The notes: generated by a model from the sequence alone, not told the origin. A stretch of 64,000 nucleotides of DNA from Macrostomum lignano (GCA_002269645.1 NIVC01000798.1:154191-218190), one strand, 5' to 3'; counted from the first letter of the stretch, positions 31,301-34,300 are shown. Made by a program: numbers and translations.

Positions 31301-34300
31301 CGCCGTTCGGCCAGGCAATCATGGCTCCGCAGGCCAGCGTGAACTCCATCCTGCTAGTGTCCAACCTGGACGATGAGGTAAGAGCATACCTTAGCCTTCA
31401 TCAGTGCTTTGATTACCTTTGTCACTTTGTTGCTATCCAACTGCAAACTATTGGGAAAGAGATATTCGTTCAAAAATGAATTCAGTAGCTTTGCAAATCT
31501 GATTTTTGTCGGCTCCATTTGATCAATAGAAAATTCTATTGGGTAAGCCGTGAACAAGCAGCTTATTGTTCTGCTTTGTACCTCACATGCTTCACTGATC
31601 TTTTAGGTCCCGCTTACTAACAACACTTACAGGATTTGTCGTAGCATTGAAGTCATCCACAGTTAGGGGGTGCATGTAATTATGCGTCTTTTGTCTTTTT
31701 TGCAGCATCATATTCTTATCACTACTAAAATTATTCTTGATTTCCTACCTGCAAGAAGAAACTTATAATTGCTTCTATTTGAATATGAAAACTACCTCCA
31801 CTGAAATGCATACTATGCTACTATAAGTGGTAACTGGCCTGCCTAAGATATCTATAATTATAAATATACTTTCCCACTTCTGGAAATTAAAAAGCAAATG
31901 CAATGCGATACAGTACTATCGACCTTACACACACACACACACACACACACACACACACACACACACACTGATTTTCTTTGCCTGACTTCCTACTGTCGCC
32001 CGAAGCCACAAAACATATCCTGCTTGAACTGTTTTTCAATTCTATAGAAGATAACTCCTGACGCTCTCTTCACACTTTTCGGTACGTCTGTTCACTTTAT
32101 TTTATGCTTTAAGCTTTGCCTTGCTACTAACAGTACTACTAGCCGCTTTTATGCGATTGCTAAGCGTTGATTTGTTTAGAGGCAATTGTCTAATAACTCC
32201 TTCGTTTCTGAATCTGTCCTCTGTTTATTTTGTGTTTCTGTTGGTCGGAATTTTGTTATAGTTTTGTGCAGTGCTTTTTTTCCCGTGGTAACAATATGAG
32301 CGAACACGATAACAGACTGCTGCAGTGATTCAACTGCAAACCTATAGAATGAGAAAAATTGTGAAAAAATGGAAAGCCACTTTCATAGAGCTAAACATTC
32401 CATGGAACTTTACGTTTACTGCAAGAGTATTATAACAAATGGTAGCTAGGTTTATATTTTAAGTATCAAATTATTAACGAGTACGGTTGCATGTGCTCAC
32501 TACAATTTTTAACCTAATTAACATAACACACCTTCCTGTTATTGCATAGTAATAGCATTGCACTTTATTTTAATGTATTCAACTTATAAAAATGTATACA
32601 AAGCACTAGATAAAAGCAACACTAGATAGCTGCGAGGATTATTGGAAGCGTCCCCTAAACGGGAACAAATAATGCGTCGTAAAGGACATCGGTGTACGCA
32701 AAAATTATTTTCCTTCAAGTCTTCTCGAGTGTTGGCGCTTGCGCAACGGCAATTTCGCACGTAGATGCAATTAATTTAGAATTAAAGTACATCACACATC
32801 ACATCCTCTAATTACATTTGTTGCTGCACACTAACCCCGGTAATTCACCAGTATGTTAACGTTTTTGAGCAATAGATGTTTAATATACGAAGCGAAAATG
32901 CATGTATTTAAGTAGCGGTGTACAAACCTTATTAGCACATCCTTCGAATGCGAACACATAAACTCGCATGTTGACATGTAAATTAAAGTGTGCATTTTTG
33001 CCTTTACCAGGCTAATCCCAGCCGATTCTATGCAGAAGCTCCTCAACCCTACACCCTCACCCCAGCCAATTCTATACAGAATCTCCTCAACCCCACACCC
33101 TCACCCCAGCCAATTCTATACAGAATCTCCTCAACCCCACACCCTCACCCCAGCCAATTCTATACAGAATCTCCTCAACCCCACACCCTTACCCCAGCCG
33201 ATTCTGCAAGCTCCTCAACCCCACACCCTCACCCCAGCCGATTCTATGCAGAATCTGCTCAACCTCACACCCTCACCCCAGCCGATTCTATGCAGAAGCT
33301 TCTCAACCCCACACCCTCACCCCAGCCGATTCTGCAAGCTCCTCAACCCCACACCCTCACCCCAGCCGATTCTATGCAGAATCTGCTCAACCTCACACCC
33401 TCACCCCAGCCGATTCTATCCAGATGCTCCCCAACCCCACACCCTCACCCCAGCCGATTCTATGCAGAAGCTCCTCAACCCCACACCCTCACCCCAGCCG
33501 ATTCTATCCAGATGCTCCTCAACCCCACAACCTCAACCCAGCCGATTCTATCCAGATGCTCCTCAACCCCACACCCTCACCCCAGCCGATTCTATGCAGA
33601 AGCTCCTCAACCCCACACCCTCGCCCCAGCCGATTCTATCCAGATGCTCCTCAACCCCACATCCTCACCCCAGCCGATTATATGCAGAAGCTCCTCAACC
33701 CCACATTCAAACTTGCTAATTTGCCAAAAGAGCTGATAGATATCGAGACGTAAAATTCAAACAACCCTTGTCCCTGATCATATTGCATTCGCAGCTTCGC
33801 AAATTTCCACAGGTGTATACGGAGATGTACAGCGCGTAAAAATAATGTACAACAAGAAGGACAACGCACTCATCCAGTTCACGGACGCCAGTCAGGCACA
33901 GCAGGCGCTGCAGAATCTCAACGGGGTGAGGCTGTTCGGACGGCCGCTGAAGATCGCCTTCAGTCGGCACGCCCAGGTCGCGCTGCCAAAGGAGGGCGCC
34001 GACGCCGGCCTCACGAAGATATTCACCAACAGTCCGCTGCATCGGTTTAAAAAGCCGCACTCAAAGAACTTTCAGAACATCTTTCCACCGTCGCAGATTC
34101 TGCACCTGAGCAACATCCCGCTGGAGGTTCCCGAGGAGAAAATCAAAGCAATCTTCGAAGACTTCGGATTTAACGTGGTTGCCATCAAGTTTTTCCAGTT
34201 AGTCACGTGCAAACAATAAGTTTTTCGATACGTATAGAAGCAGAGTTGCTTTCTATGTTTATTGCGCTTCTAATTTCAGAAAAGAGAAGAAAATGGCTCT

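What the first reader, a model, noticed from the sequence alone, without database searches (positions are those of the whole stretch)
31900..33840. PTB keeps the 34-nt 'skip-to-NMD' autoregulatory exon known from vertebrate PTBP1/2
Seen: exon 32048-32081 is exactly 34 nt, encodes [11 protein letters not shown] and carries an internal CUCUCUU...CUUUUC pyrimidine tract. Joining 31377 directly to 33813 reads GTG TAT ACG GAG ATG TAC AGC GCG TAA, a stop at 33837-39 that is 358 nt upstream of the next junction (34197). Established: mammalian PTBP1 exon 11 and PTBP2 exon 10 are 34-nt exons at this RRM3 position whose PTB-induced skipping triggers NMD. Inference: the feedback circuit may operate in this invertebrate and predate the bilaterian split. 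A NAGNAG acceptor (TAG/AAG, 32045-50) could also add or drop the Lys.
Basis: partly seen in the sequence, partly recalled or inferred. Interest (0 to 1): 0.75.

Follow-up and report, generated by a model that had tools for sequence, protein, structure and literature searches.

The report
Ancient 34-base frame-shifting exon in PTB
The flatworm Macrostomum lignano keeps, at exactly the same spot in its PTB splicing-factor gene, the 34-base exon that vertebrates skip to shut the gene off; transcripts lacking it turn up in a related flatworm and a sponge (and skip-type annotated proteins in insects), so the switch is probably very old, though its control by PTB itself is untested here.

Summary
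Exon 32048-32081 is 34 nt. Joining 31377 to 33813 gives a TAA at 33837-39, 358 nt before the next junction.

The window is the Macrostomum lignano PTB gene Mlig010779 (CDS 20016-34524, + strand).

A 34-nt exon sits at the same position, with the same intron phases (0 and 1), in:
- a second M. lignano paralogue
- a liver fluke
- a butterfly
- bird PTBP2

Public data contain the skipped form:
- a spliced transcript from a related macrostomid (…SNLDEE|ACTEMYRG*)
- a sponge transcript (Geodia)
- annotated proteins from two insects, whose tails fit the frame-shifted reading
- the known vertebrate isoforms, which serve as positive controls

So the exon is orthologous, and the unproductive isoform most likely predates Bilateria.

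Not shown:
- skipping in this particular gene
- decay of the skipped mRNA by NMD
- control by PTB

The flatworm flanks lack two vertebrate hallmarks: PTB-motif enrichment and a long AG-exclusion zone. The only PTB-like motif is the CUCUCUU inside the exon, which is coding sequence.

Verdict: a new member of a known kind. Interest is moderate.

The parts
20016..34524 (+). Coding span of the PTB (hnRNP I) gene, M. lignano Mlig010779 type. It has four RRMs; the stop codon TAA is at 34522-24.
   Evidence: tblastn with PTB proteins. Exon assembly with AG/GT junctions. 94% identity over 100% of the 467-aa model (which omits two exons) to P0241, and shares L485 with P0361. Pfam RRM_5, RRM_1, RRM_8 and RRM_occluded.
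31250..31377 (+). Upstream exon: end of the RRM2-RRM3 linker and strand beta1 of RRM3 (…[11 protein letters not shown]). The following intron is phase 0.
   Evidence: The acceptor at 31250 matches gene model P0362.
31378..32047 (+). Upstream intron, 670 nt. It holds an (AC)21 repeat at 31927-31968. The last AG before the acceptor lies 42 nt upstream, so the AG-exclusion zone is short.
32045..32050 (+). NAGNAG acceptor motif TAG|AAG. The distal site would drop the Lys codon in frame.
   Evidence: Not conserved in the paralogue (TAG|AGG). Used only in gene model P0242.
32048..32081 (+). The 34-nt exon ([11 protein letters not shown] + G). It is the smallest exon of the gene, has donor GTACGT and contains CUCUCUU.
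   Evidence: Orthologous 34-nt exons are in L002, L003, L004 and L005.
32082..33812 (+). Downstream intron, 1731 nt. It holds a 44-nt x 15.8 tandem repeat at 33017-33705.
33813..34197 (+). Downstream exon: the rest of RRM3, the linker and the start of RRM4 ([16 protein letters not shown]…).
33837..33839 (+). TAA that comes into frame only when the 34-nt exon is skipped. It is the ninth codon after the junction.
   Evidence: The paralogue and the L001 transcript have TGA at the same codon position.
33845..33847 (+). ATG of '…IMYNKK', 5 nt after the skip stop. ORF callers start the downstream product here.
34280..34343 (+). Penultimate coding exon. Its two junctions lie downstream of the skip stop.
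34456..34524 (+). Last coding exon ([22 protein letters not shown]).

Best explanation
Exon 32048-32081 is the M. lignano orthologue of vertebrate PTBP1 exon 11 / PTBP2 exon 10. It encodes the beta1-alpha1 segment of RRM3 and is needed for full-length PTB.

Because it is 34 nt, leaving it out shifts the frame. Translation then stops nine codons into the next exon (TAA 33837-39). That stop is 358 nt before the next junction and about 690 nt before the normal stop. Such an mRNA is a predicted NMD substrate under either the exon-junction model or the long-3'UTR model.

The exon is the smallest in the gene and has the only off-consensus donor (GTACGT), so a fraction of transcripts should skip it. 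I propose that this is an ancient unproductive-splicing valve that lowers PTB output. By analogy with vertebrates it would be driven by PTB itself or by its paralogue, perhaps through the CUCUCUU inside the exon.

Shown: the anatomy, the orthology and the existence of skipped transcripts in relatives. Inferred: skipping in this gene, NMD and PTB dependence.
For: - Anatomy and PTC.
- Identity of the gene: 94% identity over the whole 467-aa model to M. lignano Mlig010779g1 (the model omits two exons), L485 shared with the g2 copy (P0361), and 93-97% nucleotide identity with the g1 locus, introns included.
- A 34-nt exon with identical position and phases in M. lignano paralogue Mlig031811 (L002 9359-9392), Fasciola, the butterfly Euphydryas and bird PTBP2.
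- L001, a Logan contig from run SRR30276812, matches the paralogue locus in six separate blocks consistent with exons. It joins …GACGAGGAG|GCGTGTACGG…, exactly without the exon, and reads ACTEMYRG*.
- L006, a contig from JGI sample 3300064085 whose upstream product (P0142) is 99% identical to Geodia barretti PTBP2 (P0237), lacks the same segment (NEK|VCMEMLSV*).
- Proteins from Diaphorina citri and Cryptotermes secundus end in tails that back-translate only as the +1-frame reading of GVYGDVxRVK. Intron read-through tails do not.
- Positive control: the known PTBP2 skip isoform gives the same two-ORF signature in Logan contigs. Pongo PTBP1 'isoform 10' has a skip-type tail after …SNLNPE.
- Vertebrate mechanism: PMC1940037.
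- Smallest exon and odd donor.
Against: - No RNA data for this gene or species were reachable, so the junction 31377^33813 is unobserved.
- The skipped flatworm transcript belongs to the other paralogue lineage and to another species (75% nucleotide identity to the window).
- The flanks (150 nt each side) are not enriched for UCUU/CUCU. The window sits at the 57th and 43rd percentile of the gene background, and paralogue B is lower still.
- The AG-exclusion zone is 42 nt, against 439 nt and the 98th percentile for bird PTBP2.
- Between the two M. lignano paralogues, conservation extends only about 19 nt upstream and 48 nt downstream of the exon.
- The acceptor's pyrimidine tract is not weaker than others in the gene.
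- The in-exon CUCUCUU is also explained by coding for A-L-F.
- The rules of NMD in flatworms are not established, as far as I know.
Confidence: 0.6

Rival explanations
1. The exon is constitutive, and skipping is only splicing noise. The exon is retained because it encodes part of RRM3 and because introns at these positions are ancestral. The skipped transcripts seen in assemblies are rare errors typical of very short exons. They are cleared by surveillance but not used for regulation.
For: - No PTB-motif enrichment and no long AG-exclusion zone around the flatworm exon.
- Little flank conservation between the paralogues.
- A PTC after a 34-nt deletion is expected by chance.
- Assemblies give no abundance information.
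Against: - Skip isoforms were abundant enough to be assembled as whole contigs in a flatworm and a sponge. They were also annotated as gene products in two insects.
- The orthologous event is a proven regulatory switch in vertebrates (PMC1940037).
- Retention of a frame-shifting 34-nt length in taxa from vertebrates to flatworms (and a ≡1 mod 3 omission in a sponge transcript) fits, but does not prove, selection on the switch.
Confidence: 0.25
2. Skipping is regulated, but by something other than PTB. One candidate is an hnRNP L-like protein on the (AC)21 repeat about 80 nt upstream of the acceptor. Another is general exon-definition strength.
For: - (AC)21 at 31927-31968.
- Flanking PTB motifs are lacking.
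- From my own knowledge: CA repeats are hnRNP L binding sites that modulate splicing.
Against: - The CA repeat is not present in the paralogue's intron.
- Its length differs between the two near-identical gene copies: 13 AC units are missing in L007. That argues against constraint.
Confidence: 0.1
3. The skipped mRNA is translated into functional products. One would be a truncated RRM1-RRM2 protein. Another would be an RRM3(partial)-RRM4 fragment made by reinitiation at the ATG 5 nt after the stop.
For: - The ATG at 33845 lies 5 nt after the skip stop, and the same spacing occurs in paralogue B and in L001.
- Precedent: PTBP3 transcripts that skip exon 2 (34 nt) are not NMD substrates and use downstream AUGs (PMC4477659).
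Against: - The upstream ORF is about 390 codons. From my own knowledge, reinitiation after long ORFs is inefficient.
- The ATG is simply the Met of the conserved …KIMYNKK… sequence.
- The fragment would lack beta1/alpha1 of RRM3.
- The 170-aa and 193-aa 'proteins' are ORF-caller outputs.
Confidence: 0.07

Closest known systems
Vertebrate PTBP1 exon 11 and PTBP2 (nPTB) exon 10, the AS-NMD auto- and cross-regulatory exons
   Same: - 34 nt.
- Same codon position in RRM3 (…LLVSNLN-E | x-V/I-T-P-x-x-L-F-x-L-F-G | VYGDV…).
- Same intron phases (0 and 1).
- Skipping gives a stop at the same ninth codon (the TRA created by Val-Lys, GTR AAR).
- Two paralogues in the genome both carry the exon.
(PMC1940037.)
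   Different: - No long AG-exclusion zone or distant branch point.
- No enrichment of PTB motifs in the flanks.
- No extended flank conservation between paralogues.
- PTB dependence and NMD are not tested.
PTBP3 (ROD1) exon 2
   Same: Also 34 nt, frame-shifting and repressed by PTBP1/2 (PMC1940037; PMC4477659).
   Different: It lies at the 5' end of the gene, not in RRM3. The skipped mRNAs are not NMD substrates and use downstream start codons.
Unproductive splicing of SR-protein genes, conserved across kingdoms (Lareau & Brenner 2015, PMC4379411)
   Same: A splicing regulator kept in check by an ancient alternative-splicing event that creates a PTC.
   Different: Those events are mostly poison-exon inclusion or 3'UTR introns. 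In the passages my term search returned, that paper names PTB only in passing and in its reference list. Here the event is the skipping of an essential coding exon.

Membership tests
PTB / hnRNP I protein family | Four RRMs, including the PTB-type RRM2 (Pfam RRM_8) and the interacting RRM3-RRM4 pair | tested here: met
   Pfam RRM_5, RRM_1, RRM_8 and RRM_occluded on P0361. RRM3-4 aligns end to end with PDB 2ADC human PTBP1 at E=5e-78.
PTBP1 e11 / PTBP2 e10-type AS-NMD exon | 34-nt exon at the beta1-alpha1 segment of RRM3, flanked by a phase-0 and a phase-1 intron | tested here: met
   Window 32048-32081. The layout is identical in L002, L003 (bird PTBP2), L004 and L005.
PTBP1 e11 / PTBP2 e10-type AS-NMD exon | Skipping shifts the frame to a PTC more than 50 nt upstream of an exon junction | tested here: met
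   TAA at 33837-39. It is 358 nt before junction 34197, with a second junction at 34343/34456.
PTBP1 e11 / PTBP2 e10-type AS-NMD exon | The skipped mRNA is actually produced | tested here: inconclusive
   Seen in a related macrostomid, paralogue-B lineage (L001). Also seen in a sponge transcript and as insect protein models. No RNA data were available for this gene in M. lignano.
PTBP1 e11 / PTBP2 e10-type AS-NMD exon | The skipped mRNA is degraded by NMD (stabilised by UPF1 loss) | not testable with these tools
   Needs an experiment or NMD-inhibited RNA-seq.
PTBP1 e11 / PTBP2 e10-type AS-NMD exon | Skipping is induced by PTB protein | not testable with these tools
   Needs knockdown or overexpression, or CLIP.
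PTBP1 e11 / PTBP2 e10-type AS-NMD exon | Flanking PTB-binding pyrimidine motifs, extended AG-exclusion zone (distant branch point) and conserved upstream intron | tested here: not met
   UCUU/CUCU counts in the 150-nt flanks are at background level. The AG-exclusion zone is 42 nt in the window and 56 nt in the paralogue, against 439 nt in bird PTBP2. Paralogue conservation is limited to 32029-32129.

The most novel reading that the evidence does not exclude
The PTB 34-nt exon-skipping/NMD valve is a pan-metazoan homeostatic circuit. It was already present in the common ancestor of sponges and bilaterians and has been kept for more than 600 million years. In macrostomid flatworms the two PTB paralogues (Mlig010779 and Mlig031811) cross-regulate through it, an independent parallel to the vertebrate PTBP1 to PTBP2 switch.
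Probability: 0.35. Interest if true: 0.65.

Novelty: new member of a known kind. Interest (0 to 1): 0.5.

Why it matters
PTB autoregulation by exon skipping plus NMD is a textbook case, but it has been described only in vertebrates. My searches of the held literature found no account of it in invertebrates.

Three things follow if the event is real outside vertebrates:
- It would join the SR-protein poison exons as one of the oldest known post-transcriptional feedback devices. The evidence is that the same frame-shifting exon, and transcripts lacking it, exist in flatworms and a sponge, with skip-type annotated proteins in insects.
- M. lignano is transgenic- and RNAi-tractable, so PTB dependence and NMD rules could be tested directly in a spiralian.
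- It would also let one ask whether the vertebrate flanking elements (distant branch point, ultraconserved flanks) are later additions to a simpler ancestral switch.

There is a practical point too. The microexon is mis-annotated in several public gene models.

Tried and rejected
- **RNA evidence from the window's own gene.** Three homologue searches returned only genome-annotation proteins for M. lignano paralogue A. No transcript-derived inclusion or skip ORFs came back. The search seems to return only targets up to about 1.75 times the query length, so short queries missed full-length proteins.
- **Genomic confirmation for Geodia, Mya, Cryptotermes and Diaphorina.** The exact proteins were not on record. 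Sponge and insect evidence therefore rests on a transcript contig and on protein tails.
- **Phylogenetic footprinting of the introns.** The two Mlig010779 copies differ by only about 2-5%, which is too little. The paralogue is too diverged.
- **PTB-motif enrichment and a long AG-exclusion zone.** Both tested negative in flatworms.
- **Weak acceptor as the cause of skipping.** Not supported.
- **Rfam scan of the gene.** Nothing found.
- **Identity of SRR30276812.** No paper mentions it.
- **Literature on invertebrate PTB AS-NMD.** Nothing found. The library excludes most subscription papers, so prior description cannot be ruled out.
- **M. lignano protein P0011 as evidence.** It starts at the ATG right after the skip stop, but I rejected it as proof of skipping because the transcript behind that model is not visible.

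Full report
**1. What is in the sequence**

- The upstream exon ends at 31377 (…[10 protein letters not shown]|gtaaga).
- A 34-nt exon occupies 32048-32081: ctatAG|AAGATAACTCCTGACGCTCTCTTCACACTTTTCG|GTACGT. It encodes [11 protein letters not shown] plus the first base of a Gly codon.
- The next exon runs from 33813 to 34197 (ccacAG|GTGTATACGG… …TTTTTCCA|gttagt).
- With the exon included, the reading frame continues as [23 protein letters not shown]….
- With 31377 joined to 33813, it reads VYTEMYSA and stops at TAA 33837-39. That is 358 nt before junction 34197, and a further junction follows at 34343/34456.
- The exon contains GCUCUCUUC and CUUUUC.
- TAG|AAG at 32045-50 is a NAGNAG motif.

**2. 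Which gene and organism**

A 467-aa model assembled from AG/GT-bounded exons is 94% identical over its full length to Macrostomum lignano BOX15_Mlig010779g1. The differences are two exons I had missed.
- The window shares L485 with the second annotated copy, Mlig010779g2.
- The window is 93-97% identical at nucleotide level, introns included, to the g1 locus L007.

So the window is M. lignano or a nearly identical copy. The CDS starts at 20016 and ends at 34524. Pfam finds the PTB set of RRMs. RRM3-RRM4 aligns end to end with human PTBP1 structure 2ADC (E=5e-78). This places the exon at …LLVSNLNPE[RVTPQSLFILF]GVYGDV…, the start of RRM3.

M. lignano has a second, diverged PTB paralogue, Mlig031811 (locus L002, 73% amino-acid identity).

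**3. Is the exon the vertebrate one?**

I located the corresponding region in four other genomes.

| Source | Exon sequence |
|---|---|
| M. lignano paralogue B (L002 9359-9392) | AGGGTCTCTCCCGACGCTCTCTTCACACTCTTTG |
| Fasciola gigantica | AAAGTTTATCCAGATGCTCTGTTCACTCTCTTTG |
| Butterfly Euphydryas editha | ATGGTCACGCCTGACGCTCTCTTTACCCTTTTCG |
| Bird PTBP2 (Mesitornis) | ATGGTTACGCCCCAAAGTCTGTTTACCCTCTTCG |

In every case the exon is a separate 34-nt exon. The upstream intron is phase 0, after the codon ending '…SNLN/D-E-E/D'. The downstream intron is phase 1, inside the Gly codon of GVYGDV.

[quoted passage not shown] A Pongo 'PTBP1 isoform 10' protein ends in the skip peptide straight after …LLVSNLNPE. 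Orthology is therefore secure.

**4. Is the skipped form made outside vertebrates?**

The two closest hits to RRM3-4 both began at 'MYNKK…', the first Met after the exon. Fetching their DNA was informative.

*Flatworm.* L001 is a 1131-nt Logan contig from run SRR30276812.
- It matches the M. lignano paralogue-B locus in six separate blocks consistent with exons, so it is spliced RNA.
- It reads …ATCCTGCTGGTCTCGAACCTGGACGAGGAG|GCGTGTACGGAGATGTACAGAGGGTGA…, that is …[10 protein letters not shown]|ACTEMYRG*.
- The 34 nt are missing exactly at the exon boundaries.
- A de Bruijn assembly cannot create such a join without reads that span it.
- It comes from another species, or at least another sequence: 81% nucleotide identity to paralogue B and 75% to the window.

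*Other animals.* A search with the upstream ORF returned many truncated PTB proteins. I sorted them by what follows …VSNLNEE. Then I asked by exhaustive back-translation whether each tail can be the +1-frame reading of GVYGDVxRVK. Tails that are consistent:
- frog (VFMEMCSV*)
- vertebrate PTBP2 in Logan (VFMAMCSA*)
- Pongo PTBP1 (ASTATCSA*)
- the psyllid Diaphorina citri (ECTGMYYV*)
- the termite Cryptotermes secundus (VYMEMCSV*)
- two JGI proteins (VCMEMLSV*, VCMEMLFV*)

Tails such as VST* or VSTATSTASR*, which look like intron read-through or something else, are not consistent.

*Sponge.* One JGI protein (P0142) is 99% identical to Geodia barretti PTBP2. Its contig L006 shows an intron-less PTB mRNA reading …AATGAAAAG|GTGTGTATGGAGATGTTGTCCGTGTAA. 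The downstream frame continues VYGDVVRVKILYNKRD….

*Positive control.* The vertebrate PTBP2 skip contigs (L008, L009) show the same two-ORF signature.

So the exon-skipped, PTC-containing isoform is found as a transcript contig in a flatworm and a sponge and as annotated protein models in two insects, besides the known vertebrate isoforms. The insect evidence rests on annotated proteins only. I could not fetch their loci, nor the Geodia genomic locus.

**5. Do the flatworm exons look PTB-regulated?**

Here the evidence does not follow the vertebrate model.

| Exon | UCUU/CUCU/UUCU/UCUC in 150 nt upstream / downstream | Percentile of gene background | AG-exclusion zone |
|---|---|---|---|
| Window | 3 / 2 | 57th / 43rd | 42 nt |
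| M. lignano paralogue B | 1 / 0 | 30th / 0th | 56 nt |
| Bird PTBP2 | 19 upstream | 98th | 439 nt |
| Butterfly | 9 upstream | 97th | 55 nt |

- The bird value matches the distant branch point described for nPTB exon 10.
- Between the two M. lignano paralogues, only 32029-32129 aligns (72%). The rest of both introns does not.
- The two Mlig010779 copies are too similar for footprinting.
- The acceptor's pyrimidine tract (71% pyrimidine) is no weaker than others in the gene.
- The exon is the smallest in the gene, and its donor GTACGT is the only one that departs from GTRAG.
- The one PTB-type motif is CUCUCUU inside the exon. It is shared by the window, paralogue B and the butterfly, but it also simply encodes Ala-Leu-Phe.

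PTB dependence is therefore an inference from vertebrates, not something the sequence shows.

**6. Mechanism proposed**

- Shown: the exon is essential for the RRM3 reading frame, its omission gives an early stop far upstream of two junctions, and the omission occurs in relatives and in distant animals.
- Inferred: the same omission occurs in Mlig010779.
- Inferred: the product is removed by NMD.
- Inferred: the rate of omission rises with PTB activity from either paralogue, giving negative feedback.

My rough probabilities, from most to least certain:
- orthology: about 0.98
- some skipping in this gene: about 0.8
- NMD of the product: about 0.7
- PTB control: about 0.45

The rivals are splicing noise at a tiny constitutive exon, control by another factor, and translation of truncated products.
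- For another factor, the (AC)21 repeat at 31927-31968 is a possible hnRNP L-type site. However, it is absent from the paralogue and its length varies between the gene copies.
- For truncated products, PTBP3 exon 2 is a precedent for a 34-nt skip that escapes NMD (PMC4477659). There, though, the upstream ORF is only 20 codons, against about 390 here.

**7. The NAGNAG**

The motif is real, but the paralogue has TAG|AGG. The only product that uses the distal site is a UniProt gene model (P0242) of unknown evidential basis. That model also invents an upstream acceptor for the next exon. There is no evidence of use.

**8. Novelty**

Targeted full-text searches found the vertebrate work and general AS-NMD reviews. 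None described this exon's skipping in invertebrates. In the passages my term search returned, the SR-gene conservation study (PMC4379411) names PTB only in passing and in its reference list. The library omits most subscription journals, so earlier mention cannot be excluded.

For the window itself this is a new member of a known kind. The wider pattern, from sponge to human, is a modestly interesting lead that can be tested directly in M. lignano.

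Noticed in passing
window 30764-30790: A 27-nt in-frame microexon (GTCAGCCAAATCTTGGAATATTTCCCG, giving GQPNLGIFP) in the RRM2-RRM3 linker. It is included in NCBI model P0241 and absent from UniProt model P0362, so it may be a cassette. Vertebrate PTBP1 also has an alternative exon in this linker (my own knowledge).
   Followed up: partly
window 17731-18913 and 20541-21675: Two tetranucleotide arrays of about 1.2 kb, (AGAC)~295 and (CTGT)~283, are reverse complements of each other. 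They flank the first coding exons of the PTB gene (20016-20436). If both are transcribed, they could pair into a very long stem around those exons.
   Followed up: no
window 31927-31968: An (AC)21 repeat lies about 80 nt upstream of the 34-nt exon's acceptor. The near-identical gene copy L007 has 13 fewer AC units, so the length is polymorphic.
   Followed up: partly
window 33017-33705: A 44-nt unit repeated 15.8 times (CCCAGCCGATTCTATGCAGAAGCTCCTCAACCCCACACCCTCAC) fills 40% of the intron downstream of the exon. It is also present in L007. It is C-rich on the sense strand, and each unit carries UUCU and CUCCUC.
   Followed up: no
P0362, P0242, P0099 (public gene models): Gene predictors mishandle the 34-nt exon. 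P0362 replaces it with intron-derived [25 protein letters not shown]0242 drops the Lys and adds ASQIST. The Batillaria model P0099 omits it.
   Followed up: partly
L002 10001 (M. lignano Mlig031811g1, P0011): The annotated CDS of the paralogue starts at the ATG 5 nt after the stop that exon skipping would create, and no upstream CDS is annotated. This is compatible with a model built on a skipped or truncated transcript.
   Followed up: no
L002 7826-7876 and about 8790-8840: The intron upstream of the paralogue's 34-nt exon holds a telomere-like (CCCTAA)n run and a (GACA)n microsatellite.
   Followed up: no
window 60001-64000: G+C rises to 0.66-0.69, against about 0.45 elsewhere in the window.
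   Followed up: no
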